A DNA stretch of 64,000 bases from Mobula hypostoma (GCF_963921235.1 NC_086105.1:102796001-102860000), one strand, 5' to 3'; positions 1 to 64,000 are shown, counted from the first letter of the stretch. Numbers and translations: made by a program. Notes: a model not told the origin generated them from the letters alone.

Positions 1-610
1 AAACATGATACATTGAGTGGATATCATTTGTTTGGATTTTCAAAAAGTCTTTAACAAGGTCTGACACACAATGCTGCTACTCTGGATAAGAGATAAAGTA
101 CAAGTATAGATAGAAATGTGGTTGATTACCTTAGAAGTCAAAGATTGGGGATAAGATGGTGCTTTTCACAATGGCTGCTCGTAACTTTTGGAATTCCACA
201 AGGGTCAGTGTTAGATTTCCAGCATTTCATCTTATACAATAATGATCTGGATGAAGAAAATTATGATGTTATGGCTACATTTGATAAGTAGAAGAACAGG
301 CAATATCCCAGAGGCAGGAAGCCTGCAAAATGACCTGGAGAGGTTGGGAGGTTGGGCAAAGAATAAGCAGATGGAATGTAGAATAGGAAGTGTGGGGTTA
401 TACACATTGGTAGGAAGAACAAAAGACTATTTTGTAAATGAGGAGAAAATTCAGAAAGCAGAGGTGTAAAGTTACTTGCGATTCCGAATCCTGAATTCCC
501 TCAAGGTTAATTTACAGGTTGAGTCAATAGAAAACAAGACAAGTGCAATATTAACATTCATTTTGGGAGGATTAGTATATAAAAACAGATACGTAATGCT
601 GAGGCTTTAT
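1..610 (+). mobile_element. Degraded CR1-type LINE RT fragment (continues at about 1550-1865); paralogue at 39928-40540
   Basis: Decayed DFQKAFDKV and GIPQGSVL motifs and SLQNDLERLGGWAK. Confidence 0.7.
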
Positions 611-728
611 AGTCATGCAGAATGATGCAAGAACATCAGGCACATATATGTATATAGCTAGGGTGTCAAAGGACTGTATTTCTCAATAAGGAGCAGAGAG
701 CAAGTTTGTGGATCTCGAGGGACTAATA

Positions 729-1551
729 TCAGAATTAGAATCAGGTTTATTATCACCGGCATGGGAAGTGAAATTTGTTAACTCGGCAGCAGCAGTTCAA
801 TGCAATACATAATCTAGCGGGGGAAAAAAGAATAATAATAAATAAAATTTTAAAAAATAAACAAGTAAACAATTACGTATATTAAATTCATTTTTAAAAA
901 ACATGCAAGAACAGAAATACTGTGTATTTTTTTAAAAAGTGAGGTAGTGTCCAAAGATTCAATGTCCATTTAGGAATCGGATGGCAGAGGGGAAAAAGCT
1001 GTTCCTGAATTGCTGAGTGTGTGCCTTCAGGCTTCTGTACCTCCTACCTGATGGTTACAGTGAGAAAAGGGCATGCCCTGGGTACTGGAGGTCCTTAATA
1101 ATGGACACTACCTTTCTGAGACACCGCTCCCTCAAGATGTCCTGGGTACTTTGTAGGCTAGTACCCAAGATGGAGCTGACTAGATTTACAACCATCTGCA
1201 GCTTCTTTTGGTCCTGTACAGTAGCCCCTCCATACCAGACAATGATGTAGCCAGTCAGAATGCTCTCCACGGTACAACTGTAGAAGCTTTTGAGTGTATT
1301 TGTTGACATGCCAAATCTCTTCAAACTCCTAATAAAGTATAGCCACTGTCTTGCCTTCTTCATAACTACATCAATATGTTGGGACCAGGTTAGATCCTTA
1401 GAGATCTTGACACCCAGGAACTAGAAACAGCTCACTCTCTCCACTTCTGATCCCTCTATGAGGATTGGTATGTGTTCCTTTGTCTTACCCTTCCTGAAGT
1501 TCACAATCAAGTCTTTCATCTTACTGACGTTGAATGACTGGTTGTTGCTGC
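729..1551 (-). mobile_element. Rex1/Babar-like LINE 3' fragment
   Basis: ORF 1055-1363 KKARQWLYFIRSLKRFGMS...FYSCTVESILTG is typical of the C-terminus of this clade; short (ATTCTR)n tail at about 730-745. Confidence 0.75.
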
Positions 1552-3181
1552 AATTTTGGGTCCTTTCTCCAAGGAAGGGTGTAGTAGATTGGAAGGGATC
1601 CAGAAACTCACAAGAAAGGTCATAGGAATAAATGGCTTGACATTTGAGAAGTGTTAGATGTCTCTGCGCTTGTACTCAATGGTGTTCAGACTAATAAGGA
1701 GCTATCTCAATGAAAACTATCAGAGACTGAAAGGCCTGGACAGAGTGGATGTGGAGAGAATGTTTCCATTAGGAGGAGATAATTGGATCCAAGGGCATGC
1801 CTTCAGAATTTAGGCTTGTCCCTTTAAAAGCGCTGAGGAGGAATTTCTTCAACCAAAGGGTAAAAAGAGGACATGGGATATCCTTGGCAGATAAAGTGGA
1901 GATGATTCTTCACCGTTTCTGTGCATATTAATGGAAAAAAAGGGAAAAGGTAGTGAGTATTTCCCCTTTAGGATCAGTGTGGCAAAGTATGTCGGGGTTA
2001 CAAATGAAGGGTAAAGTTATAAATGTGTATTCTCATCTATATTTACTGTGGCAAAAGATATGAAACCGGGTAAGTTTATGGAAATTTTCAATGATATTCT
2101 GAAGCATTTTGACGTACAAAAGAGGAGGCAATTGCAGATGAAACTCAAAATAGTCTATATATCCCCAAGATACTTATATCAAGCTGCTCTGGTCACAGAA
2201 AGATAATTTGCATCTTAGAGTGGACTTCCAGCAATTGCATTGCAGGAAATTTTGGAGTTACTTAAACCAATTGAATGGTCCATTTCGGTGTTCCAGATAG
2301 GAAAAATGAATTCCTCTATTCATAATGAGTTTGAAAAAGACAATAATGATGATTATATCCCTTTTAAAATTGGATGTTGAATTTTTATAACTATGTGATT
2401 GAATATATTAATATAAAAACATAACAAAATACTTTTTCAGGATAAAGTTTTAAGGAGAGCCTGAATTACTTTTCACATTTTCCCTGGACTGTAGGAGACT
2501 GAGGGGTGAGCTGACAAGGGTTGTTTAAGATCATGAGGGCATAAATGGATGATCATAGTCTTTATCCAAGTGTAGGGGAGTCTAAAACTGAACAATGTGG
2601 TTATCTGGTGAAAGGGAAAAGATTTAAAAGACATCTGGCAGAAAAACTTATTCTCACAGAGTGGTGGGTGTATGAAATATGGTGGGAGAACAGGCTGTAG
2701 AAACAGGAACAAAGTGAGGAGATGGGACTAGGTCAGACAGACATTGGTAGGCATGGATGAGCTGGGCTGAATGGCCTGTTTCCATATTGTACAACTCTAC
2801 AACTATATTTATCTATATTTTACGTGTAAAGCTTGCTTTATACAGTAAGTCATGATATGTTGCTGAATGTATAAACGCGATTCAGAGAGATTTCGATCTC
2901 CTATTTCAGTTATTTGCTTCTCAGAAATCTCTGCTGTGAACTTGATTCATTTACAATGGGGCAATAAGTAATTGCCATACAAACAGACAATTGTTGGCTC
3001 AATGTTTTTATGTCCAAGTTCTTTCTCCACTTTATTGTTATCAAGTAATAGAGGTAAACACACCCTGCAGTATTGTTTGTTTTCTTGCTAATAGACAAAT
3101 TGACAGGTATTTTTTTCTGAAATTAAGTATATTTAATACATTCAGCCAAAGCAAATGATAAAGTATTGATTGAAGTGAAAT

Positions 3182-3187
3182 TTTATT
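3182..3187 (-). terminator. polyA signal of alpha copy 1
   Basis: AATAAA on the minus strand about 100 bp after the stop codon; conserved in copy 2 at 46585-46590. Confidence 0.7.
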
Positions 3188-3283
3188 TAACTCAGTTTTT
3201 CAATTATGACAATTAATCAAAGACAAACTGTGGAATTAAATGATGATCTTGCGGTCGTTCACCATAATTTGTTGGTTGTGTCT

Positions 3284-4236
3284 TTAGCGGTACTTGGAGC
3301 TCAATTCATGTGCGAGCAACTCAAGGAACTTGTCGACAGCACAGTGGGTTGCTGGGGAGAATGCAGGCAAGTGAATGGCCAGAGTGACCGTGATACAATC
3401 AGCCAACAGCTGTAAAAGTGAAAAATAAATAACATAAGGCAGTGTTAATATCGTCAATGGATGATTTTACCCATTGAACAAGAATTGCTTCTTTGTACTT
3501 TGACTGCTTTCCTATGTATCGTGTAGCAGGAAAAAGTTTTCCCAGCTAAACTGAACAAGACTACACTTCAAGACCACTGAAATTTCAACTAAATAAAGTT
3601 GAAAGTTCAGGATTGCTGATCTAATTACAATAACATAGTTTGTGTCATGACAATGAGAAAGAATCTGTAAAATTGTTACATACGTGAAAGTTATGAGGAT
3701 CCACAAGAAGTTCTTCACCATGTCTCTTGGCAAGCTTTTCCAGGTGTTTACTCAGGTTGTCCACGTTATGGGCTGCATCTGCCACAGCTTCCATGACAAT
3801 GCGACCATGTCTTCTGACAGGCTGGTCAGAGGCTTTGTAGCCATTGAATTTTGGGAAGTATGTCTTAGCTTGAGGGTGGATCTCAAACAACCTTCACAAA
3901 CACGGAAAATGAAAACAGAAATTATTTGCAGACACAATATACACTACATCTCACAGGATTAAATTCTGTTATTCTTCAGACCAGCAATCATGTTATTTTG
4001 GAAAAACTTCAATTCTATGCAGAGGATGTCTTTGTAGATTTATTAGTGGTCTCACTGTTCAAGAGAAATGCAAAGAAATGTTAACAATTACAAATAATAG
4101 CTGAAAATGCATTAATTATACTATGAACCTAAGAAAATTACCTGGCTAAAGCTTCCGCACCCCAAGCTTCAGCATTTGCCTTGATGTGGTTGCCCAGTTC
4201 CTCTATAACCTGTTTGTTGGGGCCAGAGAGTACCAT
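3284..4236 (-). CDS. hba: Haemoglobin alpha chain, copy 1; 3 exons: 4142-4236, 3684-3891, 3284-3409; 142 aa
   Basis: Spliced translation: MVLSGPNKQVIEELGNHIKANAEAWGAEALAR|LFEIHPQAKTYFPKFNGYKASDQPVRRHGRIVMEAVADAAHNVDNLSKHLEKLAKRHGEELLVDPHNFH|LLADCITVTLAIHLPAFSPATHCAVDKFLELLAHELSSKYR*. Both introns are GT..AG at the canonical globin positions (phase 2, phase 0). Distal His (RRHG), proximal His (KRHG) and C-terminal KYR are present. Confidence 0.97.
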
Positions 4237-4299
4237 TGTTGCAGAGTTTTCACTTTTTCAGATCTCTCATTAACCAGAAGATGCCTCTGGCTTGATGTG

Positions 4300-4550
4300 T
4301 CCGTATTTATTGTAATTCACACTGATCTACAAACTCTCCACCCCACTTTTCCCATTGGTTGTGGGTCCTGATTCATGGTCTACGTAATCTAATGATAAGA
4401 GACAATAGTGAACAGAGAACCAGTTGTCTGTTTCACAGACAACTGTTAGCAAAGATATCCTGTTCCAGTAAAGCTAAACACTACCTGCACACGTTTCACT
4501 TGACGCACAATTGTAAAGGTTTAGTTTATTGCCATGTAAGTTATCAGTAA
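4300..4550 (-). promoter_or_regulatory. Alpha-globin copy 1 proximal promoter
   Basis: ATAAATA TATA-like box at 4304-4310 (about 70 bp upstream of ATG); CCACCCC at 4338-4344; CCAAT at 4354-4358 (minus strand); GATA sites TGATAA 4393-4398 and TTATCA 4541-4546. All are conserved in copy 2. Confidence 0.75.
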
Positions 4551-5199
4551 ATGAACATTAATATTCATCAATCAATGTGCATTTCCAAACTAATTCTGAT
4601 ATAATAAGTTTAATTCATTTTGTTGTTACTTTGGGCTGTATCGCCTATTGAAATTCATCCTGCTCACCCTCGGTCTTTTTATTTCACAACTGTTTAACCT
4701 CAGTGTGCGGGGAGACATGGTTTTCCAATATTCACAAAACACCTGCTGTGTACACTGCACAGAAATGACTGGACAGAATGAATTTTGATAATGTAGCCAC
4801 ATTGCACCAGGAAGTGTGTAGGTCTAAAATCACGTAAATGAAGAGTATTAACATGCAGCTGAAGGATTTATTTGTGCACAGGTGATGGAAGGTGTAGGGT
4901 GTCAGGACGACCAGGGCAACTTTGGAAAATTGGTCTGGAATTTCATAGACATGGGTGATCTGAGCTGATGTTACAGGGACATTTAGAGAAGAAAAGTCAG
5001 CCACAAGCTCAGCTCAGTAGAAGGTTACAGGCCTGACCAAACAGAGACTGATGAAGTCGGTGGTCTGATATTAGAGTTAAGCAGGCATAGTCAATGTTTT
5101 TGTTCTTCACAAATCTTAGATAGCGCAAAATTCCACTCCATCATTGCCAGACATCAAGTAACCGGCGTGACTGAGCAGAAGCATTAGAAGAGTCAGTGG

Positions 5200-6290
5200 A
5201 GTTGCAAAAAATCAGCATTAAGGAGTTGGAGCTCGAACTGCATGAACTCCAGATCATTTGGGATGCTGAAGGAGTGATAGACAGGACATAAAGAGAAATA
5301 GTTACACCCAAAGTTCAGGACACAGGAAACTGAGGGACAGTCAGGAAGGGGAACGAGGTTACGGAGTCAGTGTCGAGTACTCTGTGGCCATCCCCCTCAA
5401 CGATCGCTTTGGATATTCTTGGGGGTGGGGGTTGACCTAACAGAAGAAAGTCACAGTGGTCGGGTCTCTAGCACTGAGTCCAGAGGCACTGAGGAATGGA
5501 TAGGAAGTTCTGTGGGTAAGAACAAGATTCTTGGATGGTATGTTGCCTCCCAGGTGCCAGGGCCCGGTATATCACAGACTGAGTCCTCTGCATACTTAAG
5601 TGGGAGGGTGAACTTAACTGGTTGTGGTCCATGTAGCCACCAATGACATGGGTAGAACGTGTAATGAGGTTCAGCATAGCAAGCACAGGGAGTTAGGTGT
5701 TAAGTTAAAAGGCAGGACCTCTAGGGTTGTGATCTCAGGACTGCTACCCATGCCGCATGTTCGTGAGGCCAGAACTGGGGAGATTATACAGTTTAAAACA
5801 TGGCTACAGAGTTGGTGCAGGAGGGAGGGCATAAGATTTTTGGAACATTGGACTCTCTTTCAGGGAAGATGGGACCTGTACAGAAGGGATAGTTTGCGCC
5901 TCAACTGGAGGGAGACTAATGTTCCAGCAGGAAAGTTTGTTAATGTGGAGTTTAAACTGGAGTTGCAGGGGGTTGGGAACCAGAGCGACAGAACAGTTAG
6001 CGGAGAGATCGTGGAGGCAGATGTCGGTAAGATCTCAGACAAAGTATGTCAGCATGGTGCGACAAGTGTCTCGAGCTGTGTATTGTTTAATGCAAGAAGT
6101 ATCATAGGAAAGTCAGATGATTGTGCAGGAGATGAGGTAGATGGTTTACAAAGAGAGGCACTATGTAGTGAGGAGAGGCAAAATTGCAGTGAACAGCATG
6201 AGTTGCAATGTAAAAGGTGGACAAAATCGAAAACGTTGAATACAGGACTGAAGGTGTTATAATTGAATATGCTCTGTATACAGAATAAGG
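5200..6290 (+). mobile_element. CR1 LINE ORF1 (SGNH/GDSL esterase-like) remnant; paralogue at about 48590-49700
   Basis: ORF 5624-6262 VHVATND...RVVISGLLP...WLQSWCRREGIRFLEHW...WDLYRRD, homologous to 42811-43263. Confidence 0.8.
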
Positions 6291-6295
6291 TAGAT

Positions 6296-7970
6296 CAGTG
6301 TTTCCCACCCTTTTTTAGCCAAACGTCCCCCCTAAAGCACCTTCATAATTGTCAACACCCCTCTTAAGCAAAATATACTTTCTGATGCCCCTGTAGTGTA
6401 AGAACATGTCTACCATGTGCTAACATGAGGAAAATGATTCCACTTTAAATTTTTATTTATCTTTATAGCCCGCTTACACATTACCTGTGCACTGTACAGC
6501 AGCTTCAATATTCATGTGATCCTTGAGCTTGATGGTTTTTAGTAAGATTTGAAACAACTGGTTCAAGTTGTGACAGCAAAAGCCTTAAGTCCCCATGTGT
6601 AACAATGTCCAAGTGCTTTCTGTTTTTTGTGAGTATGTGGTTCACTGCCCTGAAGCCTCTTTCAACAAGGTAAGAGGATGGAAATCCAAGGAAGAGCAGT
6701 TTGGCTCTTCTCCAAAGACCAGGAAATTTTGTATGACTGTGTAGCTACTTACCACAAAAGCTGATATTTTTGAAAAGCATTTTTGTCTCTTCATCATTCT
6801 GAATTTCTATAATTTCTTCTTGCAAGCTCTCTTCCTGTTCTTCCATCTTGCAAAAGAATGGGTTAATTACTCAATCAGGAAATTCCAGATTGTTCAAATC
6901 CTTGAATCCACTCTGAAAATCCTTCTTCAGTGATTGAAGTCGTAAGCAATACTCTTGTAAAGAGGAGGAGGCGGAGAAGATGGCGGCACGACTCAGCATG
7001 CGCAACCACTCTGGTGAATGATATCTGTAATCTGTCAAGTAGGGTGCCATGTACAATCCTGATTTGATGGAAACAGATGTGAGAGAACAGAGGAACATCT
7101 GGAGAAACTTCTGAAATGCCTGCTTTGCTGCCGCTGTTACTGTGTGATCCAGAATCTCCGGAGGGGAAGGCCCCGAGTCCCCGGCTTTGCTTGTTGCTCG
7201 GCGGCCGGGACTGGGTCGAAGCACTCGGCAGAGATGGTGCTCGGTGCTTGGTGTCGAAGGGCTGGTCAGAGGCTCAAAGTTTTTGGACGGACTCAGAGTC
7301 GGCTGTGGTCGGGTGCTTCCAATGCATCGACAGTTGTCAGTGCCTGGAGGTTTACGGCAGAGAGAGTTTATCCCTTCTGCCACCTGCTATCAGGGACTAT
7401 CGAGAGTCGGTCGGAACTGAGACTTATTTTTTACCCTTCTCATGGTCTTCTCTTTATCAAATTATGGTATTGCTTTGCAGTGCTGTAACTATATGTTATA
7501 ATTATGTGGTCTTGTCAGTGTTAGTCTTTGGTTTTTCTTGTTTTTTGGTGATATCACTCTGGAGGAACTTTGTATCATTTCTTAATGCATGCATGCATTT
7601 CTGAATGACAATAAATGAGGACTGAGTGTCCTCATAGTCTAATCTAAATCACAGTCTGGGAAAGAGAGTGCCGTACTTCCTCTGCTGAGAAACTGTGAGA
7701 ACTTCTCCCAATGTTTTGCTTATATATTTCCAATTTTTCAATACAAGTAGACACAGCACTTTTTGCCTGGATTAAGTTGAAATTCTCACCCTACAGTTTC
7801 ATATTCAGAATGTTAATTTCATCATACAGATTGGCTAGTTATGCCACATCTCCATGTGGAAGATCGATCTCGTGTCTCAAGTTAGGGTTCCGCTTACCGC
7901 CTCCCCAAGAATCTTGAATGTCTCCCAGTGATTTCTATTTCCTCTAACACCCCCTTAGAACACGTAACTG
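6296..7970 (-). mobile_element. hAT (Charlie/Buster-like) DNA transposon remnant, interrupted by an insertion at 6962-7648
   Basis: Terminus CAGTGTTTCCCA at 6296. The paralogous ORF 49918-50253 encodes the hAT C-terminal motif FPSSYLVERGFSAV...GDLR. Confidence 0.75.
6962..7648 (+). mobile_element. ~690-bp non-autonomous retroposon, copy A only
   Basis: Absent at the paralogous site (50365 gtaaattacc). TAAA direct repeat at both ends; 5' GGAGAAGATGGCGG; 3' AATAAA, hairpin and TCTAA tail. Confidence 0.8.
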
Positions 7971-9599
7971 CCTATGCTGAGTTAATTAAGATAATCATGC
8001 CTCATTAAACTAATCACTTCTGCCTTCACATTGTCGATATTTCTCCTATTCTGCAGTTTATCCCAAAATAACTCTACCAAGGGAAAGTGAAACATTGTAT
8101 CTGCTGAAAGACTGAAATAGGAAAAAGAGCATTAGAGGTTCTCAACAGGCCAGGCAGCACTTGAGGAGAGTGAAACATATCAGTGACTTTCATTAAAACA
8201 GGAAAAGTGTGAAAATAAGCTTCAATTTTCAGTCTGAGGAGAGAACGAAGGGAGTATCTTAGCTAGGGTAGAGACGATTCCTCCCCAGTATTCACAAATA
8301 ATGAGCTTCTAGGATGAATATAGGTAGGAAGAGGAATGAAGAAAATAGAGAGACAAATAAAGTGGTGGAACACTGAGATGTAGGGAACTCCAGTTGATGG
8401 AAAACTGAAATTAAAGAGAATTTTTGGAAATACTTGGAAGATCAGGGTGATCCACGGAGAGAGAAAACCTGAGTGAATGTCATCAAGCATCAAACTGAGC
8501 AGTTCTAACAGAAACAAGGAAGGCTAGTTATCAGAATCTCTTGTATCTTGGAACTACAAGTTGTCTGCAGGGAAGATGAGGGATTGTTTCTTGAGCTTCT
8601 TTTGGGTTTGGTGAAGCTGTATTCGTGGCCCCAGAATGAGAAATCATAGTGGGAGTGAGATGAAGAAATAAAATGAAAGGCAACTTAAAGGTCAGGGTCA
8701 CCCATTAGGATTGAATAGTGATAGTCTGCAAAATTATCATCGATCTGCAATTGGTTTCTCCAGTGTAGAAGAGACCGTGTTGTAAACACTGAATGCAGCA
8801 CACTGGATTGGAAGATTGGGAAAAGAAATTAAAGTTCAAGTTCACGCAGGGCATAAAAGCCATGAAAATTACTCTTGTGTAGCATGACAGCGGTACATAG
8901 GAGGACAAAGACAAACTGCAGTTAATATAAACTTAAATTTACATAAATTATACTTAATTTCAATGTGAAAAATAAACAATATTAGTGCAAGATTGAGAGA
9001 AAAAGAACAGTTCATTGTACCAATGTTACTTCTTTCCTAAACTCAAATATATAATTATAACAGTCCGTTTTGACTTTCTTTTCAAATATATATTGTACAA
9101 ATGTGCAATAATTAAGTGGGACTGAATTGTCAACTGCTCTGAATTTCTCGCAAATATTTCTGTTCACTTCACTGTAACTCATTTTTTATTCTGCTGCAGC
9201 AACGCAGAAATACAAAATTACACAACCCACTCTCTTTGTACAATTTTTTTAATATTGAAGCAACATCTATTATTTAACTTAGTGACGGATATAATTTTAT
9301 AATATTTAACTTCAAATGTTTTGTAAAACTACTTAATTAATGTATTGAGAAAGCTAGTTTTGTGATGAAAACCTAATGTAATGTGAAAGCTGATTTAGAT
9401 ACCTGATGTTATGAAAGCTTACAGTTATTTGGGTTCAGCTTGTTGAAACATTTGTAAAAGCTGCTTTGTATCATCAGAGTATGGAGATGGGGAGTATAGT
9501 CTATCTCAGGATGCCAGCTTTTTGGTGTGCCTGTATATCTGCAGGTTTGAAAAGTGTGGGACAAAGGATAATTACATTTTTTTTGTAAAGCAACCTTTT

Positions 9600-9830
9600 T
9601 CTAGATAAAGAACTAGGCTTAAGATCACATGCAACAACATTTTCTCCATATCGGGCTACCTTCTAATATTTGGTGCAACGATACAGCGAGTTGCCGCTGA
9701 ACATTTGTTGATGAGTCATTGGAACTTTATCAGCTTTGAAGTGATGAATATACACAATAGACCATTTCCAGAACACCCAAGTGCACGAGTCTTGCAAATG
9801 CATGATTGGGTACATCTCAGTTATCAACCA
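9600..9830. promoter_or_regulatory. Candidate erythroid enhancer (AP-1/NF-E2-like, GATA and CACCC cluster)
   Basis: GATGAGTCAT 9710-9719; GATA sites AGATAA 9603-9608, TTATCA 9727-9732 and 9821-9826; CACCC 9774-9778. No transposon similarity seen here, and 9680-9826 is identical in copy B. Confidence 0.4.
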
Positions 9831-30178: not shown

Positions 30179-30179
30179 G

Positions 30180-52762: not shown

Positions 52763-54886
52763 GGTTCACATTAGTCCGGCCTTGAGCCAGTTGAGAACCA
52801 TGTTTCTATAGTTGCAAACCTATTTTAACAGCAGACTTTAATGATAAAACTGGGGAAATTTATTGTGCATATTTGTTACCAATATATATTTAGTTTAGAT
52901 TGAGGCCCTCTGTGGGGAATAAAGCAAATGTAATTGAATTTGATGCTTGATTATTTCTTGATATTGTAGGTTATTTAGTCTCCCATGTTTCCTCACCTGG
53001 ACAGTTCAGAGATCCAAAGCACAGAGAAGAACAATGCTATGGTTATGGTTGGTGGTGGGCAGGACGATGTTAATGATGGGGACAGCATAATTAAATGGTT
53101 AATTTGGTTGGTTTGGTTGTTCTCATGTTTACAGAGCATGAACGACAGAGAGCTAGAAGACATGCATCAGATCTCCAGGTAAACATGATGCAGAAGATGG
53201 ACTTGGCAGCTGACAGACTGTAGCTGAGATTGGGTTGTTTGGATGGTCACCGGATGGATGAGAACGTGATCTGAAGACTAAATCTGACACCAAGGGTGAA
53301 AAGTTTGAGACTGTTGCCAGTGGAAGAAATGGAATGAAACACTGGAAAAGGCCAAAGAAATATCTTCAGTCTCAATGATTCAACTTGTCAGGATGTGTTA
53401 CCTTTATTTCACTAAATGTCCAAAAATGTGGATTTCACCCAGAATCACACAGTGAGCAAAAAAAAGTTCCATCTTTAGTAACTGGATCAATTAACGAATT
53501 GTTCTTCTGATAGTTTAGTAGCCTTAAATTCACTGATAATTCAGGGGTGACAGGATTGCTCTGCCTTGAATATATAATCCCATTGATTAATCTGCAGCCC
53601 CAGCAGAGCTAATTTTATGTACTGCTGGTATAAAAATCAATAAAAACCAAAACAAATGCCAAAGGGAGAATGACTAAGTCATCTGTCAGAAATATGAAAA
53701 ACAATAAAAATCAAATTGTACCAAACCTACCAATTGAAGGAAATTTCTACTCATTTGATAGTAGAAATTAGACAGGACATCTTATAACTGAGAGGCAATG
53801 GAGGATTCCTGAGAAATGGCAGTGAAGTGTGGGGTCAGTGCTGCTGTGGAAACAGTGTGTTTTAGAAAAAGCTGAATGTTGGGTTATCCAGTAAGTGCGT
53901 TTGGCAGGAGTTCCCTCTACAAGCTGATAGGAGGCAATAGAGTATATAAAGGCTTCAGACAAAGTTAGACTTTCTTTGTATATGATCCTTGACCTAACTC
54001 TCTGTCACCTGTTGTAGGATAGGTAGTACTAATTTGAGGAAGATATTTCCATGAATTGACCTTCCTTCTCACCTTCCCTATTCTGATGAGGTGGAGTGTT
54101 CTGTTCTTGGCAAGGCCTTAACCTTTTCCCCCTCCAGCCGCACCTCAGTCAGTTCCATAGCAGCCACAATGCCGAGATCCTCTTCTGTTGTCTCTGTCTC
54201 CGAGACCATTTCTTTGGCAAGAATTCCACGGGCTGCTGCAAAGGATCGAAATAAGCTCCAGAGAGTTGTAAACTTAGTCAGCTCCATTATGGGCACTGCC
54301 CTCCCCTCCCCCCCCCACCCCCGTGGTATCCAGGACACCTTCAAGGAGGATGCCTCACCAAGGCAACATCATCATTTAGGACCCCATCACCCAGGTCATG
54401 CTTGTTCTCATTGCGACCATCAGTAGGGAGGCACAGAAGCCTGAAGGTACACACTCAGTGATTCAGGAACAGCTTCTTCCCCTCTGCCATCTGATTTCTG
54501 AATGGACATTGAACCCAGGAACACTACCTCACTACTTTTTTATTTCTATTTGCACTACTTATTTAATTTAACCATTTAATATATATACTAACTGTAATTC
54601 ACATTTTTTCTATTATTTTGCATTGAATTATACTGCTGCCACAAAAACAACAAATCTCACGACATATGTGGGTGATATTAAAATTGATTCAGATTCTGTT
54701 CCCGCAACAATGACCCCTTCTCCCGTATCGAGCCCTCCTCCTTATCTTGGACACCCCGCTCTTGTTTTCTACCTGCTCTGGATCTTTTCACTCCTCAATG
54801 TTCCTTGAACCGTGCCCCCTATGAACACACTACCCTCTATTCTTTCCTCACTAATCCTAACCTTACCATTAAACCTGCAGTAAAAT

Positions 54887-55401
54887 TCTGATATGTCTAT
54901 CCATGGCCTCCTCTACTGTAAAGATGAAGCCACACTCAGGTTGGAGGAACAACACTTTATATTCCATCTGGGTAGCCTCCAACCTGATGGCATGAACATT
55001 GACTTCTCTAACTTCCGCTAATGCCCCACCTCCCCCTCGTACCCCATCCGTTATTTATTTATCTACACACATTCTTTCTCTCTCTCTCTCCTTTTTCTCC
55101 CTCCGTCCCTCTGAATATACCCCTTCCCATCCTCTGCGTTCCCCCCCCTTTTCCTTCTCCCTGGACCTCCTGTCCCATGATCCTCTCATATCCCTTTTGC
55201 CAATCACCTGTCCAGCTCTTGGCTCCATCCCTCCCCCTCCTGTCTTCTCTGATCATTTTGGATCTCCCCTTCCCCCTCCCACTTCCAAATCTCTCAGTTA
55301 GTCCTGACGAAGGGTCTTGGCCTGAAACGTCACCTGTACCTCTTCCTAGAGATGCTGCCTGGCCTGCTGCGTTCACCAGCAAATTTGATGTGTGTTGCTT
55401 T
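54887..55401 (+). mobile_element. Penelope-like 3' fragment, copy B only
   Basis: 8-bp TSD AGTAAAAT at 54879-54886 and 55402-55409; same family as 38473-39342 in reverse orientation; empty site at 15008. Confidence 0.88.
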
Positions 55402-58400
55402 AGTAAAATGGGGTGCTATTATAGTGTGGCAGATTGACCCCCACCTTGCTGAGGCTAAGCGGCAACTCTCAGATATTTCAGACATCCCACCCTGCAAAAA
55501 CTCATTTCAGGGAGGTAGCACCATCAATTTGCGGGAGACTCCCAGAACTTCCGGGAGGGTTGGGATATCTGCAATAGAGCAGCCGCTTAGCAGCTAGCCA
55601 GCTAGTTAAAATAACGTTAGCTATGCTAATGAACGAATGACACCTGTTAAACCCACCTCAACGTGTCTTTTACAATCTTAACCCACCACAGGCAATAGAA
55701 AAGTCACTGTTGCAAACAGTGCAGCAAGCAACACTGTCATTATTTTTGACCCCTGTTAGGCAGGAGTACACTTTAGTGTAGTCTGGGGTGACGTATGTTT
55801 TAAATTTTCATTTTATTTTTATAATTATATTTATATTTATATTTTTATATGCATCTGATTTCCCCTTAGCAGAGTTCAAACACCCATCAATCTCTGTGTA
55901 AAAACACCTCCCTCTTACATGCCCCTAGACTTTCCTCCCAACACTCCCAACAATTATGTCTCCCTGTAAAAGAGACCTTTTGTGCCCAAGGAAAAAGAAT
56001 GTCCAATGCACTCAATCTATGCCTCTTATCATCTTGTATGTCTTTATCTAGTCACCTCTCATTCTCGTTCTTTACAAAGAGAAAGGCCATAGCTCACTCA
56101 ACCTATCCTTATAATACTTACACTGCAAACGTGAGGGATCTACGGATGTGAACTATAAGATCCCTCTGTTCCACTTCACTATTAAGAATCCTGCACCAAC
56201 CTTGTATTCTGCCTTCAAGTTTGACATTCTAAAGTAATTTACTTCACACTTTCCCAGATTGAACTCCATTAACCATTTCTCAGGTCAGCTCTGCATCCCA
56301 TCAATGTCCTACTGTAACCTATGACAACCTTCTTCACTATCCACAACACTGCCAAACTTCTTGTTGTGTGGAAACTTACTAACCACCCTTCCACTGACTC
56401 ATCCATCATCTATAAAATTCATAAAGAGAAGAGATCCTAGAAGAAATCCCTATGGGATACTAACCTCCAAGCCACTAACCTCCAGGCAGGATATGTTCCA
56501 TCTACTACCAACCTCTGTTTTCTGTGGACAAGTTAATTCTGAATCCACCCAGTTAAATTTTCCTGGATCCTTGCCTCCTTTCTAAATGTGCCTACCATGT
56601 TGAACATTGTCAAATACCTTACCAAAATCCATATACACCAAATCCACTTCTCTGGTCTCATAGATTTGTTTTGTAAAATCCTCAAAGAATTCAATCAGAA
56701 CCGTGAGGCAAGACCTATCCCTTACAAAGTCATATTGTTTATCCCTAATCAGACTATGCTTCTCTACATGGTTGTCGATTGTGTCTCTAAGAATGCTTTC
56801 CAATATTTCACCCACCACTGATGTAAACTCACTTGCCTATAACTCCCAGCATTATCCCTATTACATTTGCCTCCCTCCAATCCTCTGGTACTATTCCTGT
56901 GGCGAGTGAGGATGCAAACATCATTGTCAGATGTGTAACAATCTCTTCCCTCACTTCCCATAATAACTTTGAGTATATCCTGTCCAAGCCTGGGGACTTA
57001 CCTAACCTAAAGTTTTCCAAAAGTTCTAGTGGATCCTCTTTCTTAATGTCAACATGTTTTAGTTTATCAGCTTATCCTAAGCTGACCTCTCTTTTATCAA
57101 GTTTCTTCTTGCTTGTGATTACTGAAGCAAAAGATTCATTAAGGAGCTCCACTACCTCCTCCAGCTCGGGGCATGTTTCCTCTTTTGTCCCTGATCAGTC
57201 CAGTCTTCATGTTTGTGCCTAATAGCATCATAATTCCCCCTCCACAATTTTACAATTTCATCTAAAATCCACTCCGATCCATGTCAAAGGTTATGGTAAA
57301 GGTCAGGGAGTTGTGGTCACTGTCTTCATGATGTTCACCTGCCAAGAGATCTGTCTCCTCTCCTGGTTTAACGTCTTGTACCAGATCCAATTTTCAGATC
57401 AAGGAGCATCATATGGGGATCAACCAAGTTCACACCAAGGTGTTGTAATCTAATCATAATCAAGAGAAAATCTGCAGATGCTGGAAATCCTGCTGAAGGG
57501 TCTCAGCCCAAAACGTTGATCGTAAATTTTTCCATAGATGCTGCCTTGCCTGCTGAGTTCCTCCAGCATTTTGTGTGTGTTCCAAGAGCTGTGTTCTGTC
57601 CACACTCTAGTATGGATCAGAGTGACCTTGTCAAGCTGTTGTCATTCCACACCAGGAGCCTCAGGAAGACTCTCTGTACTTTTTGGCAAAGAAAGATCTC
57701 CAACCAAGCCCAACTCCTGCAGTGTCATCATGAAGAAACACTGGTGATGGACTGGGCATGTGATGAGAAGAAAGGCCAACTCCATCATCAGGATGACATG
57801 TCATTGGACCCCTGAAGAGTGGAGGAAACACGGGAGACCAAAGATAAATTGCTGCTGTGATGTAGAGGCTGAAATGAGGCCCTGAATCACACCTGGAGCA
57901 CAACAGAGAAGATGGCCAAAGATAGACAGAGATGGAGGATCTTCATTACTGCCCCCTAAATGCCAGCAGCGTAATGAGCAGTAAGTAAGTACCTGATCCA
58001 GTAAGGGCTTTCCTCTAGTTGGCCTTACTCCATACCCAGTCAGGAATCCTTCCTGAACATACCTAACAAATTCTGCCTCATCTAAACGTTTTGCTCTACG
58101 GAGATGTCAATCAATATAAGGGATGCTGAAGCCACTGATGACAACAAAGATGCTGTTCTTACATTTTTTCAAAATCTGCCACCTGATCTGATCCACAGTG
58201 TCTCTGTTGCTATTAGGGGAGTCCATAGAATACCACCAATAGTGTAGTTGTTTCCTTACTGTTTTCACTTCCAACCACAGACTCAGAAGTTGATTTCTTC
58301 AGGAGATCTGCGTTGTTATACTATCCCTGATTAGCAATGCCACTCCTCTCTCCCTGTCTCTTTTGAAACATCTAAACCCCAGAACATCCTCCAACCATTC

Positions 58401-59607
58401 CTGCTCTTGTGACAGGCAATTGTCATGCTATAAGTGAAGCACAACCACATCCAGTGAGGATCCATGTAATGGAACTGTATCCAGTTAGGATCAGTGATGT
58501 AACCACTATAAGTTCATCACCCTTGTTCCTGTTAATATCATTACAACAGATACTTTTCAACCCATCCAACGATCCTGCAATAATGCCCATTCCACCACCT
58601 ATCCTGCCTCGCAGTCTCTCTACAGGCTGCATTTACCTTTACAACAATGGCCCCATTCTCTGACCTATCACTCTGTTTCCCATCAGAAACAGAATCAGGT
58701 TTAATATCGCTGACATATGTCGTGAAATTTGTTGTTTTGTGGCAGTAGTACATATACATACATAATAATAACAAAAAATATAATTATAAGAGGCATACAT
58801 AAAACATAAATTAAGTTATTAGTGAAAAATGAAGGAAAAATTGTGAGGTACTGTTCATGTTTGTGAGTCATTGTCCATTCAGAAATCAGAAGGGGCGGTG
58901 GGGAAGAAGCTGTTCCTGAAAACTTGAGTGTGTGTCTTCAGGCTCCTGTACCTTCTCCTTGATGGCAGCAAAGAGAAGAGGGCATGTCCTGGGTAATGGA
59001 GGTATATATTATGAGACAGTATAAATATGATGAACTAAAATGGCTTCCTCTTTCCTCCTGGAAGTATTTATAATTAAAAAGGTAAATATGAGGAACATGT
59101 TTTTGAGCTTGCCTGCAGGAAATACAGAGAAAGTCAATGGTTGGTATTAGTTTTTGCGGAATCCTGATATACGACCAGCCCTGGTTTTACGTGATCCACT
59201 TGGATCCAAATATTGTAAAAGCCACTCACTTTAGACCAGTCCTTATCATCAGCCAGAATGTCCACCAAACCCCTCTTCCCCGATTATTGCCCCACCGTCT
59301 TTGCCATCTCTGTGAAGAGTTACCAAATGGTTTACAGGCTTGTGAGGTTTGATTATAAAACAGGTAATATTTTGCAATACTTATTCAATCTTTATATATA
59401 TTTTATAGTAATTTGTAGTGCATTTAATGCATTGCACAGTACTGCTGCTACATAACAACAAATTTCATGACATACGCTGCAACAATAAACCTAATTCTGA
59501 TTCTGATTCTGAAATTCTAAAGCCCTAATGCACTACAAATGGGAGACCTGGCTGATATTTGCTGCAGCTGCACTGAATGAGTTGGAGGCAAAAACATTAA
59601 AAGCCCC

Positions 59608-61433
59608 TATAAAAGCGAAAATCAAAGTGATGAACATAAACCTGTGAGGCTGCAGCCCTACTTGCTGTGAATCTCAGACAGAAACTCATGGGAAAACATT
59701 ACTCTTTGAGTGTATTGTACCTGTTCTGACTGTGATCCAAGTCACCGGAGAGGCACTCAAGCTGATGATATCAAAGTCTTCACTCAGCCCATTAAACAAG
59801 CATTCTTCTGGAGAAACACACACAAAATTCTGGAGGAGCTCAGCAGATCAGGCAGCATCTCTGGAAAAGACTGATGACAGAGTCCTGATGAAGGGTCTTG
59901 GCCCAAAATGTCGACTGTTTACCCTTTTCCATAGATGCTGCCTGGCCTGCTGAGTATTGCGTGTTGCTTTGGAATTCCAACATCTGGAGATTTTCTTGTG
60001 TTTGTGATTCTTCTGGAGACACTCTTGCAAGAATCTCACAGGCAGCGTCTCTGGAAAATAATAAACAGTCAACATTTTGGGTCCAGAATATTCAGCACAA
60101 ACATGAAGCAAGTAAATGGCCATTATTGATCAGCAATCTGCGGAGGCAGCTGATGATGATGCTGCCCATCGTGATTCACTTTCTTCTCCTCTGCAAATGA
60201 GAGGAAAATGTGCTTGTGAACATACTGGCTGGGTGATTTGTTAACATCTTGGTGGGTATATACAAAAAGCTGTGAAATATGGGTTTAGAACTAGGGTCAG
60301 AGTAAAAATAAAGTAAGGGTATCATGATGCAAAAGTTAAATAAGAACCATTATAGGTAGAGATTACTGGCCAAGTGTAATTGTAGAAGCAGTGTGCAAGA
60401 GATTAAGCAGCTGGAAAATGACTTAAAAGGCGGGAGGGGGAGATGGCAGCGCACCTGCGTGTGCGCAGCCCTCCGGTGAAAAATGATATTGTATCTGTTA
60501 AATAGGGGCCGTGGACAATTCTGATTTGATGGAGAATGGATGTGAAAGCACAGAGGAGCATCTGGAGAAATTTCTGAAACACCCGTTCACTGCAGTTGTT
60601 ACTGTGTGGTCGGGAATCTTTTGGAGGGTAGGCCTCAAAATCCCCGGCCTTGCCTGCTTTTGGCAACCGAGAAGGAGGTCGAATCATTCAGACAGAGATG
60701 GCGCTCAGTACTCGGTGCCTTAGAGCTGATCAGAGCTCGAAGTTTTCTGATGATTCAGAGTCGGATTGTGGTCAGCATGGCAGGGAGAGTTTTTCTTCCT
60801 TCTCCCGTCTGCGTGAGATGTGGGACATTTGAGAGACTTTGAACTTTACTGTGCTCATGGACTGCTTCATCAAGTTATGGTATTGTTACACTGTTTGTAA
60901 CTATATGTTATAATTATATGGTTTTGTCAGTTTTTTCAGTCTTGATTTGTCCTGTGTTTTGTGATATCACATGGGAGGAAATAATGTATCATTTCTTAAT
61001 GATATTGTCTAAATGACAATAAAAGAGGACTACGTGTCTTCATAATCTAAAACACTTTCTTAGTACAAGTCGACCTTCACTAATCCGACTACCTATAATC
61101 CGGTTCCTTCGATAATCTGGCACTGATTATGCTTAATGCGATCCTTCTGTAATTCAGCATTTTCATTAATCCAGCACTCCTCAGGTCCCAATGGTGCCGG
61201 ATTAGGTCGACCTGTATTGCCCTTGTGTCTTTGGTATTGATTTTGATTTAAAATTTATCCTACCAGTGCTTCACAATGACCTCTACAATTTTCAAATACC
61301 TCTCCTCCTCTCCACACCATCCATTATTATCTCCAGAACTGCCCATTGTGATACACCATGACCCCACCAACCTTCCTACAAGTTTGAAATGACAGCTGAT
61401 AATGATGAGAGGCCATGACCATTTCCTCTATAA
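59608..61433 (+). pseudogene. Putative decayed alpha-like globin pseudogene (copy 2)
   Basis: Paralogue of 25201-26214 (TATA 59608, ATG 59688, exon-3-like 61302-61433), lengthened by insertions at about 59869-60058 and 60429-61052. Confidence 0.5.
60429..61052 (+). mobile_element. ~620-bp non-autonomous retroposon of the same family, copy B only
   Basis: Empty site in copy A at 25838 (acttaaaacac). TAAAA TSD; 5' and 3' ends similar to 6962-7648. Confidence 0.8.
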
Positions 61434-64000
61434 GATGAATCATCATGAACTTAATCTAAACCTCTGATGCCCAACCAGTGGTAGTGCACCCTGTGAGTGT
61501 ACTTCAATGCCACAGACAGCACAGATATTGACTAGACACTTCCATCACAATAATGAGGTAGGTCTCAGGAGATTACAGATGCTAGAATCTGCAGGCAAAG
61601 AACTGAGCTGGTGGTGGAACTCAGTGTGTCAAGCAGTGTTTGAAGAAGGAAACGGACAGTATGCATTTCTATCAAGACCATTATAAAGAAGTTTTTAGCC
61701 TAGCGTCTTGGTCTCAGAAATGTTTTGTTTATGAGATGCAGGATATCAGCTCCATCGGTGGGTTAAGATAAAGTCAGATGTGTAAGTGTTACAGTGGAGT
61801 AAAGGAAATTACAGAGACATGAGAGAGGAGCTGACCAAAGTAGATTGCAAGGGGATACTAGCAGGGATGATGGCTGGAGATTCTGTGGGCAATTTAGAAG
61901 GCACAGGACAGATACATCCCAAAGATGCAGAGTATTCTAAAGGGAGGATGAGGTTCAACAAGAGAAGTCAAAGTCCAAATGAAAGGAATAAAGAGAGCAC
62001 ACAATATAGCAAGTTGTAGTAAGTTGGAGAATTGAGAAACTTGAAAACCAACAGAAGGCAAGTGAAAAAAACATAAATAGTGAAAAAATGAAATATGAAG
62101 GTAAGTAGTCACTAATATAACAGAGGATACCACAGATTTTTCAGATATATAAGAAGTAAAAGAGAGTGGATATTGGACTGCTGGAAGAGGATGCTGGGGA
62201 GTTTGTAATTGGGGCTAAGAAATAGCCGAAGAACTTAATAAGAATTTAATGTCAGTCTTAACCGTGGATTGAAACTAGTGAAAAAGAATCTCAGGGTTGT
62301 ATGTGGTGGCATGTATGTACTCTGATAATAAATTTTACTTTGAACTTTGAACTTTTTCATTGTATGCCTGAAATATGAGTGCTGAGGGAAAAAGTGAGTG
62401 TAGTTGCTATCACTAAAGAGAAGGTGCTTGGGAATCTGAAATATCTGAAGGTAGTTTTGCCACCTGGACCAGATGAACTTCCCCCAGTTTTGTAAGAGGT
62501 AGATGAAGAGATTGTGGAGGCATTAGTAATTATCTTTCAAAATTCTATCAGTACCTCCAGTTGAATTCTGTCTTTTTGTATGTTTCCCCTTAGCTGTCAG
62601 CCTATGGTTTTGTATCGCCATGTGCTCCTGCTCTACTCTGGCCTCTGTATTACTGAGTACTTCGTGTCTCATCTGCTTCTCATTATTACCTGTATTGCTG
62701 CCACCTGTGTCTCATTGTGCTCCACCTATCATCTACCTCTCTGTTTATTGCTCAGTGTATTTCAGTCCTGTGTTTTCACCTGTTCATTGCCAGATTGTGC
62801 CAGTGAATTTTCCTGAGCCTTTCCAGCATTTGCATCTGTCCGTCTGAATATTGACTCTGCATGTTTCCAATTCCGGTTTTTGGATTTCTCTGGATGTTTT
62901 GATCTCTGCCTGAACTTTGATGCCGACTTTGTTTGCACCTTAGGATTTGTTACTCAATTAACATCACTGTTTGCACAGTATTTGGTCTGTGATTAGATCC
63001 CTGTTCCAGTGCCCTGACAGATTTACTATATTCTGGAATGGTTCTGGAGGACTGGAAATGCAAATTATAGACCAGTTAGTCTGACCCCAGTAATTGGGGT
63101 GATGTTGGAGTCCATTATTAAGGTTAAGGTCCTGGGGTACTTGAAGGCAAATGATAAAATTCACCAAAGACATCATGGTTTCTTTAAGGGGAAATCTTCC
63201 CTGATAAATCTGTTGGAACACTTTGTGGAAATAATTGGCGAGATGGATAAAGGACAGTCAGTAGATATTGTTTATTTGGTTTTTCAGAAGGTCTTTGACA
63301 AAGTGCCACACATGAGGCTGCTTGACAACATAACAGCCCATGGTGTTACAGGGACAATACTAGCATCGATAGAAGATTAGCTGACTGACAGGATGCTAAG
63401 GGGGGGGTGGGAATAAAGGGGGCCTCTTTTGATTGGCTGCCATTTTCTTGTTGTTTTCCACAGGGGGCATGTTGGGACCACACTTCTTTTCATGTTATGT
63501 ATCAGTGACTTGGATGTTGGGTGGACGGCATGTAGTGCTGAACAAGCAGGGAGTCTGTAAAAGGAATTAGACAGTTTGGGAGATGGGTAAAGAAGTGGCA
63601 GATGGAACACAGTGCAGGGAAGTGAACGGCCGTGCACTTTGGTAGACAGTATACAGGCAAAGACTATTTTCTAAATGGTTAGAAAAGTCAGATATCAGAG
63701 GTGCATGCAGATGTAATAGTGCAAGGGAAGATAATAAAAGAATGCACAATGGTGTTGCAGTTACAAAAAAGAAGTTCACTGCTGATGGACAATAAGGTGC
63801 AACTCTATAATGATGTAGGTTGTTAGATTGACAATCCATCTTGTCATACAAGTGGGCTATTTCAGAGTTCCAAGTTTTAAGTTTGAAGTTAAAAGTGAAT
63901 TTATTAACAAAGTACATAAATGTCACTATATACAACCCTGAGATTCATTTTCTTTCGGGCATACTTGGTAAATCCAAAAACCATAATAGAATCAATGAAA

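What the first reader, a model, noticed from the sequence alone, without database searches (positions are those of the whole stretch)
1..64000. Haemoglobin cluster built from a ~40-kb tandem alpha+beta module with all intact genes head-to-tail
Seen: 1-31184 is repeated at 39928-64000, and the gene order on the minus strand is alpha(47.6k) -> beta(34.4k) -> alpha(4.2k). Known: teleost clusters typically have head-to-head alpha/beta pairs, and amniotes have separate alpha and beta clusters. Inference: the amplified unit is a whole alpha+beta(+pseudogene+enhancer) cassette, which would raise globin dosage while keeping 1:1 chain balance. It predicts another beta gene about 1.9-3.2 kb beyond the window end and possibly one about 6-7 kb before position 1.
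Basis: partly seen in the sequence, partly recalled or inferred. Interest (0 to 1): 0.75.

Follow-up and report, generated by a model that had tools for sequence, protein, structure and literature searches.

The report
Devil-ray haemoglobin alpha-beta tandem repeat
This window is the middle of the lesser devil ray's haemoglobin gene cluster, where a roughly 40-kb unit carrying one alpha and one beta gene is repeated head-to-tail. The repeat is real and old, but the genes are already annotated and the cluster was described in a 2026 paper.

Summary
Positions 1-31184 and 39928-64000 are direct repeats, with 18.5 kb alignable at 95.6% identity. Three intact three-exon globin genes lie on the minus strand: alpha 4236-3284, beta 34357-33119 and alpha 47639-46687.

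Their proteins match exactly three consecutive Mobula hypostoma RefSeq entries, XP_062913467, XP_062913468 and XP_062913469. The published gene list for this species continues B-A-B-A on both sides. I could not fetch their offsets or strands.

The haplotype artefact is rejected for four reasons:
- The copies differ by 4.6% (K2P).
- Each carries its own LINE insertion, with a clean empty site in the other copy.
- The alpha coding sequences give dN/dS 0.08.
- Each M. hypostoma beta has a same-order best match in the separate M. birostris assembly, so the array predates that species split.

Three parts of the interpretation are not supported:
- I found no pseudogene.
- The enhancer is untested.
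- The 1:1 balance fails at gene level (12 alpha to 8 beta genes).

Walt et al. 2026 (PMC13023373) already describe the co-linear alpha-beta pair as the basic unit in cartilaginous fish, and describe this species' expanded cluster. The only nuance here is direct rather than anti-parallel orientation. Interest is low.

The parts
3284..4236 (-). Alpha-globin gene A (142 aa). Exons 4236-4142, 3891-3684 and 3409-3287, stop 3286-3284. Introns are 250 and 274 bp, GT..AG. It equals M. hypostoma XP_062913467 (GeneID 134351322).
   Evidence: gene model; exact protein match; Pfam Globin, 5.9e-28; CCAAT at -122, ATAAATA at about -75, AATAAA 97 nt after the stop.
33119..34357 (-). Beta-globin gene (142 aa). 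Exons 34357-34266, 33985-33778 and 33247-33122, stop 33121-33119. Introns are 280 and 530 bp, GT..AG. It equals M. hypostoma XP_062913468 (GeneID 134351323).
   Evidence: exact match; Pfam Globin, 4.6e-22; TATAAAA at -77, AATAAA 201 nt after the stop.
46687..47639 (-). Alpha-globin gene B (142 aa). Exons 47639-47545, 47294-47087 and 46812-46690, stop 46689-46687. It equals M. hypostoma XP_062913469 (GeneID 134351324). It differs from alpha A by K46N, H101Q and 7 synonymous changes.
   Evidence: dN 0.006, dS 0.078; (a spliced RNA contig across intron 2, 46812|47087, with 0 mismatches in 121 nt).
1..31184 (.). Copy A of the repeat unit, as far as it lies in the window. It is truncated at position 1 by the window edge.
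39928..64000 (.). Copy B of the repeat unit, in direct orientation. It is truncated at 64000 by the window edge.
31185..39927 (.). The beta-bearing part of the unit. Its paralogous copies would lie just outside both window edges. It has no partner inside the window except one 540-bp inverted repeat element (38473-39013 ~ 55396-54885).
   Evidence: inferred from the alignment reaching both window edges and from the annotation order.
42880..46367 (+). A LINE inserted after the duplication, in copy B only. It has an uninterrupted 928-aa ORF (43362-46148) with endonuclease and reverse-transcriptase domains. The site is empty in copy A at 2961/2964.
26697..29064 (+). A shorter copy of the same LINE family (it aligns only with the 3' 2.37 kb of the copy-B element, 94.4% identical), inserted in copy A only. 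The site is empty in copy B at 61912-61914.
11470..21438 (-). Two segments specific to copy A, 11470-14527 and 15016-21438, either side of a short shared block at 14528-15015. They carry LINE-derived ORFs: a reverse-transcriptase ORF at 11529-13076 and an ORF at 19035-20090 that looks like L1 ORF1. They account for most of the size difference between the units.
   Evidence: RVT_1, 7e-29; Atlas feature match 0.95 to L1 ORF1-type clusters; a lead only.
51239..51461 (.). A 223-bp foldback insertion specific to copy B, flanked by a 13-bp direct repeat (GGCTAGTTATCAG at 51227-51239 and 51463-51475). It belongs to a very high-copy family.
   Evidence: sequence; DNA word depth about 2e6 against about 20 for the flanks.
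4845..5373 (.). A low-divergence patch 0.6-1.1 kb upstream of alpha A, paired with 48241-48770 upstream of alpha B. There are 3 mismatches in 529 columns, against 4.4% on average.
   Evidence: binomial P about 1e-7, chosen post hoc. In one search the copy-B partner shows single-copy DNA depth over 48200-48599, a repeat-like rise in the 48600-48799 bin, and no RNA contigs.
23382..24216 (.). A second low-divergence patch, paired with 57792-58626. There are 9 mismatches in 835 columns. Part of it reads like an old LINE 3' end.

Best explanation
The window is the core of the haemoglobin cluster of the lesser devil ray, Mobula hypostoma. The cluster lies on the 152.4-Mb chromosome of assembly GCA/GCF_963921235.1.

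A unit of about 40-43 kb holds one alpha gene and, 12 kb downstream on the same strand, one beta gene. This unit is repeated in direct (head-to-tail) orientation, and the window shows about 1.6 units.

The most likely origin is unequal crossing-over, or another segmental tandem duplication, of the ancestral co-linear alpha-beta pair. That step is inferred. It happened before M. hypostoma and M. birostris diverged.

Since then the copies have diverged by about 4.6%. They acquired separate LINE insertions, which explains why unit length varies. Both alpha genes stayed under purifying selection.

Shown here: the direct repeat, the intact genes, their identity to annotated genes, the post-duplication insertions and the cross-species one-to-one matches. 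Inferred: the mechanism of duplication, the exact position and strand of the neighbouring beta genes, and any benefit from gene dosage.
For: - Repeat and its truncation by both window edges.
- Gene models with canonical splice sites, promoters and poly(A) signals.
- Exact matches to XP_062913467, XP_062913468 and XP_062913469, in the same order as window coordinates.
- Table S1 of PMC13023373 gives the GeneID order A316 B317 B319 A320 B321 A322 B323 A324 B325 A326 ..., so the genes alternate on both sides of the window.
- The closest pairs agree between alpha and beta. Alpha467/alpha469 differ by 2 aa and beta466/beta468 by 7 aa, the closest of the three betas that share the run with beta468 (464, 466, 470).
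- Every M. hypostoma beta has its lowest-difference partner in M. birostris, in the same accession order (2-4 differences within the array against 7-21 between those four run paralogues). Four pairs have 93-100% bootstrap support and a fifth has 80%; beta468/589 is unresolved in the tree.
- Clean empty sites for two LINE insertions.
- dN/dS of 0.078 between the alpha copies.
- A spliced alpha contig in RNA-type runs that is absent from the DNA run.
Against: - The DNA outside the window could not be fetched (searches returned no DNA and no coordinates). The offsets and strands of beta466 and beta470 are therefore not verified.
- Treating accession or GeneID order as chromosome order is an inference. 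It is validated only for the three genes in the window.
- Beta468 and beta470 differ by 14 aa, although exon 3 is identical. Not all neighbouring units are equally young, and some exchange between paralogues is likely.
- PMC13023373 says cluster expansions are anti-parallel, which would not give the direct order seen here.
Confidence: 0.9

Rival explanations
1. Assembly artefact: the two copies are uncollapsed haplotypes of one locus placed side by side.
For: Tandem false duplications do occur in long-read assemblies. Logan contigs of the source sample cannot give true read depth.
Against: - The copies differ by 4.6%, with 41 small and at least 9 large indels.
- Each copy has its own LINE insertion.
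- There is no gap (N) between the copies.
- A beta gene lies between them.
- The alpha copies differ by 7 synonymous and 2 replacement changes, a pattern of purifying selection.
- The independent M. birostris assembly carries one-to-one counterparts of the successive paralogues.
- Contigs of the DNA run include both exact copy-B pieces and 95-99% paralogue pieces, at similar word depth of about 10-30.
Confidence: 0.02
2. Only the alpha-bearing segment is duplicated, and the beta gene at 34 kb sits in unique DNA between two alpha copies. The unit is then not an alpha+beta cassette.
For: Inside the window the beta region 31185-39927 has no partner.
Against: The repeat alignment stops exactly at both window edges, which is what truncation by the window would give. 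The published gene list shows a beta on each side, 134351321 and 134351325. Beta466 differs from beta468 by only 7 aa.
Confidence: 0.05
3. The cluster as a whole grew mainly by anti-parallel (inverted) duplication, as published. The window happens to show a locally direct stretch, and the neighbouring units may be inverted.
For: PMC13023373 states that expansions are anti-parallel, including in the lesser devil ray. The GeneID order contains B317-B319, A326-A327 and A329-A331 adjacencies, which would fit inversion points.
Against: Three consecutive genes in the window are on one strand. The run B319 A320 B321 A322 B323 A324 B325 A326 alternates strictly, which inverted duplication (A B B A) would not produce. 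Homology continues in direct orientation to both window edges.
Confidence: 0.15

Closest known systems
Hb cluster of cartilaginous fishes as described by Walt et al. 2026 (Genome Biol Evol 18:evag058, PMC13023373), including the lesser devil ray itself
   Same: It is the same species, the same RefSeq assembly and the same genes (GeneIDs 134351322-324). The basic unit is a co-linear alpha-beta pair. The cluster expanded in batoids, and the paper reports several alpha and beta duplications shared between giant manta and lesser devil ray.
   Different: The paper's text says the unit is duplicated in anti-parallel orientation. The window shows a direct, head-to-tail repeat over at least 1.6 units. 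The following are not in the paper's text: unit size (40-43 kb), 4.6% divergence, private LINE insertions and low-divergence patches. Its Fig. S11b could not be read.
Tandem alpha-globin and beta-globin gene arrays of amniotes (birth-and-death with occasional gene conversion)
   Same: Expansion is by tandem duplication. The paralogues are kept under purifying selection. There are mosaic patterns between paralogues: beta468 and beta470 share an identical exon 3 but differ by 14 aa elsewhere.
   Different: In amniotes the alpha and beta genes lie in separate clusters. Here one repeat unit carries both.
Teleost LA/MN haemoglobin clusters
   Same: Alpha and beta genes are linked and interleaved in one cluster (general knowledge).
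   Different: Here the alpha and beta genes are co-linear on one strand.
Dasyatis (Hemitrygon) akajei haemoglobin, PDB 1CG8
   Same: It is the closest solved structure listed by the protein searches: 71% identity for alpha (chain A) and 67% for beta (chain B).
   Different: It comes from a different stingray family. It says nothing about gene arrangement.

Membership tests
Vertebrate haemoglobin alpha and beta subunits (Pfam PF00042 Globin) | Globin domain over the whole protein | tested here: met
   Globin E = 5.9e-28, 3e-28 and 4.6e-22, all above the curated cut-off.
Vertebrate haemoglobin alpha and beta subunits (Pfam PF00042 Globin) | Three exons, with intron 1 splitting the Arg codon near residue 31/32 (phase 2) and intron 2 lying after residue 100/101 (phase 0) | tested here: met
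   AG|G split codon, GT..AG at all six introns, and exons of 95/208/123 nt (alpha) and 92/208/126 nt (beta).
Vertebrate haemoglobin alpha and beta subunits (Pfam PF00042 Globin) | Distal (E7) and proximal (F8) histidines | tested here: met
   Read directly from the translations. In alpha...VRRHGRIV... and ...AKRHGEELLVDP.... In beta...VQAHADKV... and ...[10 protein letters not shown].... Alignment to the canonical positions is by eye and not from a structural alignment.
Vertebrate haemoglobin alpha and beta subunits (Pfam PF00042 Globin) | Transcribed and spliced | tested here: inconclusive
   a contig in two RNA-type runs joins 46812 to 47087 (alpha B intron 2) with 0 mismatches over 121 nt, and no such contig is in the DNA run. 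Other array paralogues could be identical over that stretch. The runs' RNA label is a guess by the tool.
Cartilaginous-fish Hb cluster built from co-linear alpha-beta units (PMC13023373) | Alpha and beta are adjacent on the same strand | tested here: met
   alpha B (47.6 kb), then beta (34.4 kb), then alpha A (4.2 kb), all on the minus strand.
Cartilaginous-fish Hb cluster built from co-linear alpha-beta units (PMC13023373) | Units are duplicated in anti-parallel orientation | tested here: not met
   the two unit copies in the window are direct repeats. The rest of the cluster could not be examined.
Cartilaginous-fish Hb cluster built from co-linear alpha-beta units (PMC13023373) | Flanked by GbY, Aanat2/Rhbdf1 and Luc7l | not testable with these tools
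   The flanks lie outside the window, and searches returned no DNA.
True paralogous segmental duplication (as opposed to haplotypic false duplication) | The copies are present as separate loci in an independent genome | tested here: met
   M. birostris carries same-order best matches for the successive beta paralogues and for alpha469 (1 aa difference to A590).

The most novel reading that the evidence does not exclude
The core of the Mobula haemoglobin array (GeneIDs 134351319-326) grew by direct unequal-crossover duplication of a 40-kb alpha-beta unit, and not by the anti-parallel duplication stated in the literature. In addition, each unit carries its own regulatory DNA (the two low-divergence patches). 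That DNA would substitute for the Nprl3-borne enhancers, which in cartilaginous fishes lie on another chromosome.
Probability: 0.15. Interest if true: 0.45.

Novelty: already known. Interest (0 to 1): 0.2.

Why it matters
Haemoglobin clusters are a textbook system for gene-family evolution. Cartilaginous fishes show the early jawed-vertebrate layout, with alpha and beta linked on one strand.

This window gives a clean worked example of how such a cluster grows. A whole alpha+beta unit is copied in tandem. The copies then drift apart by about 5%, pick up their own LINEs and keep both coding sequences intact.

That is useful detail, but it is not new. The genes are in RefSeq, and the cluster, its unit and the duplications shared among Mobula species were published in March 2026.

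Two leads go slightly beyond the paper. First, the orientation here is direct, where the paper says anti-parallel. Second, two unusually conserved non-coding patches sit in each unit. These could bear on the open question of what regulates ray globin genes, given that Nprl3 lies on another chromosome.

Tried and rejected
1. Fetching DNA or coordinates around the neighbouring beta genes. The look-up of encoding contigs on P0002 and P0001 returned no DNA, no coordinates and no neighbouring genes within 10 kb. The predicted offsets therefore stay unverified.

2. Looking for the 'pseudogene'.
- tblastn with the window's own globins and with 90 ray, shark and tetrapod globins, and low-stringency blastn with whole genes, found nothing convincing.
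- The best off-gene hit is a 25-residue stretch resembling alpha exon 3 at 50914-50988, with a shorter 18-residue hit at the homologous 8231-8284. Its E-value is about 0.05 per query among 90 queries. I treat it as chance.

3. Enhancer motifs. Counts of GATA, TGASTCA, CACCC and E-box motifs in the low-divergence patches and the promoters are unremarkable. There is no extended NF-E2 site. At 95.6% identity, motif conservation between units carries no information.

4. Rfam.
- The whole window at gathering threshold gave no match.
- 50500-56000 at E<=1 gave only sub-threshold generic hairpin hits to miRNA families on the foldback, and no hammerhead family.
- 22800-24800 gave nothing.

5. Pfam on 20 long ORFs. 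Only LINE domains turned up, plus one ALKBH8_N hit (E = 1.7e-7) and one sub-threshold capsid hit that I disregard. There is no non-globin cellular gene.

6. Gene conversion between the alpha copies. Divergence is about even across gene and flanks. Exon 1 is identical, but it is too short for that to be significant.

7. Read depth as a test of haplotype against paralogue. Only Logan contigs were available, and these cannot give depth.
Full report
**Observation.** A self-BLASTN of the window joins 1-31184 to 39928-64000 through ten colinear direct blocks of 90-97% identity. One further 2.37-kb block lies out of order (26696-29066 ~ 43993-46361). Re-aligned with MAFFT, 18,504 columns pair at 95.6% identity (K2P 0.046; 517 transitions, 301 transversions, 41 small gaps). 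The other 12.6 kb of copy A and 5.5 kb of copy B have no partner. The window contains no N.

The alignment begins at base 1 and ends at base 64000. The repeat is therefore cut by the window and does not end there. The 'unique' middle, 31185-39927, is simply the part whose copies would fall outside. The offset is 39,927 bp at the left edge, 43,403 bp between the two alpha start codons and 32,816 bp at the right edge. '~40 kb' is a fair figure for a unit whose length varies with insertions.

**Genes.** Motif scans and six-frame reading give three complete genes on the minus strand:

| Gene | Exons | Stop |
|---|---|---|
| alpha A | 4236-4142, 3891-3684, 3409-3287 | 3286-3284 |
| beta | 34357-34266, 33985-33778, 33247-33122 | 33121-33119 |
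| alpha B | 47639-47545, 47294-47087, 46812-46690 | 46689-46687 |

- All six introns are GT..AG. Intron 1 splits an AG|G arginine codon, as in other vertebrate globins.
- Each gene encodes 142 residues with a full Pfam Globin domain and both haem histidines.
- The alpha genes have CCAAT at -122 and an ATAAATA box. Beta has TATAAAA at -77. AATAAA signals follow the stop codons.
- No other globin-like sequence was found with the window's own proteins, with 90 other globins, or at the DNA level.

**What the locus is.** An exact-sequence look-up shows which proteins these are. Alpha A, beta and alpha B are identical to Mobula hypostoma RefSeq proteins XP_062913467, XP_062913468 and XP_062913469. 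These are three consecutive entries on the 152.4-Mb chromosome of GCA_963921235.1, numbered in the same order as the window coordinates. Earlier notes of this scan also call this genome the lesser devil ray.

Table S1 of Walt et al. 2026 (PMC13023373) lists the species' globins. By GeneID the order is A316 B317 B319 A320 B321 A322 B323 A324 B325 A326 A327 B328 A329 A331 B332 A335 B336. GbY and one more alpha follow, and two alphas lie elsewhere. That makes 12 HbA and 8 HbB. The window holds 322-324.

**Does the unit include beta?** The evidence says yes.
- The repeat reaches both window edges.
- In the published list the gene after alpha B is a beta (134351325 = XP_062913470) and the gene before alpha A is a beta (134351321 = XP_062913466).
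- The closest relatives agree between the two families. Alpha467 and alpha469 differ by 2 residues. Beta466 and beta468 differ by 7, the smallest distance between beta468 and the other betas of the alternating run, 464, 466 and 470.

I could not check the predicted distances (1.9-3.2 kb past the end, 6-7 kb before the start) or the strands. The look-up of encoding contigs returned no DNA and no coordinates for this chromosome. It showed only that no other gene lies within 10 kb of beta470, which fits the prediction. An earlier first-reader note places an 'alpha-globin upstream region' 33.6 kb before the window. That fits a further unit on that side, but I did not test it.

**Paralogues, not haplotypes.**
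- The copies differ by 4.6%, with many indels.
- Each carries a private LINE of the same family with a precise empty site in the other copy: 42880-46367 in B against 2961/2964 in A, and 26697-29064 in A against 61912-61914 in B.
- A beta gene lies between them, with no gap.
- The alpha coding sequences differ at 9 sites, 7 of them synonymous (dN 0.006, dS 0.078, ratio 0.078).
- The separately assembled giant manta genome has a lowest-difference partner for each M. hypostoma beta, in the same accession order: 464~584, 466~586, 468~589, 470~591, 474~593 and 477~597, at 2-4 differences. Betas 464, 466, 468 and 470 differ from one another by 7-21. Four pairs have 93-100% bootstrap support and 477~597 has 80%; 468~589 is unresolved in the tree. 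Alpha469 differs from manta A590 by one residue.

The array therefore predates the split of the two Mobula species. Accession numbers of Hypanus sabinus betas (even numbers 648-656, with an alpha at 655) hint at the same alternation in a stingray. This agrees with the paper's statement that several duplications are shared between manta and devil ray.

**Why the unit length varies.** The copy-specific DNA is largely LINE-derived.
- A LINE in copy B has an uninterrupted 928-aa endonuclease plus reverse-transcriptase ORF.
- Copy A holds a shorter copy of the same LINE family.
- A reverse-transcriptase ORF lies at 11529-13076.
- A 352-aa ORF at 19035-20090 resembles L1 ORF1 by language-model features only.
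- A 223-bp foldback with a 13-bp target duplication is private to copy B.

**Divergence profile.** Mismatches are spread fairly evenly, including across the alpha genes. I see no clear recent gene conversion there. Exon 1 is identical, and both copies share E28 where other paralogues have D. That is a hint of exchange, but it is not significant.

Among betas the pattern is mosaic. Beta468 and beta470 have identical exon-3 peptides but 14 differences elsewhere. Beta466 matches beta468 in exon 1 but matches beta477 in exon 3. This suggests some exchange between units.

Two patches are much less diverged than average: 4845-5373/48241-48770 (3 of 529) and 23382-24216/57792-58626 (9 of 835). Their motif content is unremarkable, and part of the second patch looks like an old LINE tail. 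They may be constrained DNA or conversion tracts. I leave them as leads.

**Expression.** In contigs of three RNA-type runs of the same species (the RNA label is the tool's guess), one contig joins 46812 to 47087. These are exactly the alpha B intron 2 borders. It has no mismatch over 121 nt, including three sites that separate alpha B from alpha A. The DNA run has no such contig. An alpha of this type is therefore spliced and present, although another array paralogue could be identical over that stretch.

The very deep contigs (1e5) that touch the alpha exons cannot be assigned to a single gene. The exon-1-like contigs are much shallower (depth 10-377). The loose ends read at the exon 1 border, which may come from records not shown in the piece table, continue into exon-2 sequence coding LFELHPQTKT and LFELHPYTRI. 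Those match other paralogues (XP_062914868 and P0049), not the window's genes. This fits the paper's remark that few paralogues supply most chains in related rays. It weakens the '1:1 dosage' idea, as do the gene counts of 12:8 here and 20:9 in the manta.

**Comparison with what is known.** Walt et al. state that the basic unit of cartilaginous-fish Hb clusters is a co-linear alpha-beta pair. They also state that the lesser devil ray has one of the more complex expanded clusters.

The one difference is that the paper describes expansion as anti-parallel. The window shows a direct repeat, and the strict B-A-B-A run from GeneID 319 to 326 also argues for a direct core array. Inversions possibly lie at B317|B319 and A326|A327. 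I could not view the paper's Fig. S11b, which probably shows this.

**Verdict.** The core interpretation, a tandem alpha+beta module with more betas beyond the window, is supported. The add-ons (pseudogene, enhancer, 1:1 balance) are not supported. The locus is annotated and published, so it rates low on novelty.

Noticed in passing
window 42880-46367 (ORF 43362-46148, + strand): A LINE with an uninterrupted 928-aa ORF carrying endonuclease and reverse-transcriptase domains. It was inserted after the unit duplication and ends in ATGGTTCT-type 3' repeats. A shorter relative, 94.4% identical, lies at 26697-29064. The family may still be active in this genome.
   Followed up: partly
window 51239-51461 (flanking repeats at 51227-51239 and 51463-51475): The foldback that another first-reader note calls a hammerhead carrier is a 223-bp insertion private to copy B, with a 13-bp target-site duplication. 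In the DNA run its word depth is about 2e6, against about 20 for the flanks, and it is abundant in RNA-type runs, so it belongs to a very high-copy mobile family. Rfam gave no hammerhead match at E<=1, although CTGACGA...GAAAC core letters are visible.
   Followed up: partly
window 4845-5373 / 48241-48770 and 23382-24216 / 57792-58626: These two patches are far less diverged between the units (0.6% and 1.1%) than the 4.4% average. The first lies 0.6-1.1 kb upstream of each alpha. In the laid copy-B stretch it is single-copy over most of its length and has no RNA contigs. Each could be a regulatory element or a gene-conversion tract.
   Followed up: partly
M. hypostoma beta paralogues P0025, P0034, P0002, P0001 (outside the window except P0034): The betas are mosaic by exon. 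Beta468 shares an identical exon-3 peptide with beta470 but an identical exon-1 peptide with beta466, and beta466 shares exon 3 with beta477. This suggests exchange between units.
   Followed up: partly
window 47544 (loose ends of RNA contigs): Loose ends of RNA contigs at the exon 1 border continue into exon 2 of two other alpha paralogues, with peptides LFELHPQTKT (= XP_062914868, listed next to GbY) and LFELHPYTRI (= P0049, on a 482-kb scaffold). The exon-1-like pieces listed there match at 95-97%. Those other paralogues are therefore transcribed in these samples.
   Followed up: no
window 21293-21522: A 63-bp tandem repeat of 3.6 copies at 91% identity, at the edge of a segment specific to copy A.
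   Followed up: no
window 40980-41435 (- strand; homologous to about 1050-1500 in copy A): A 151-aa ORF hits Pfam ALKBH8_N (E = 1.7e-7) over 42 residues. It is most likely part of an old transposable-element remnant and not a cellular gene. This was not checked.
   Followed up: no
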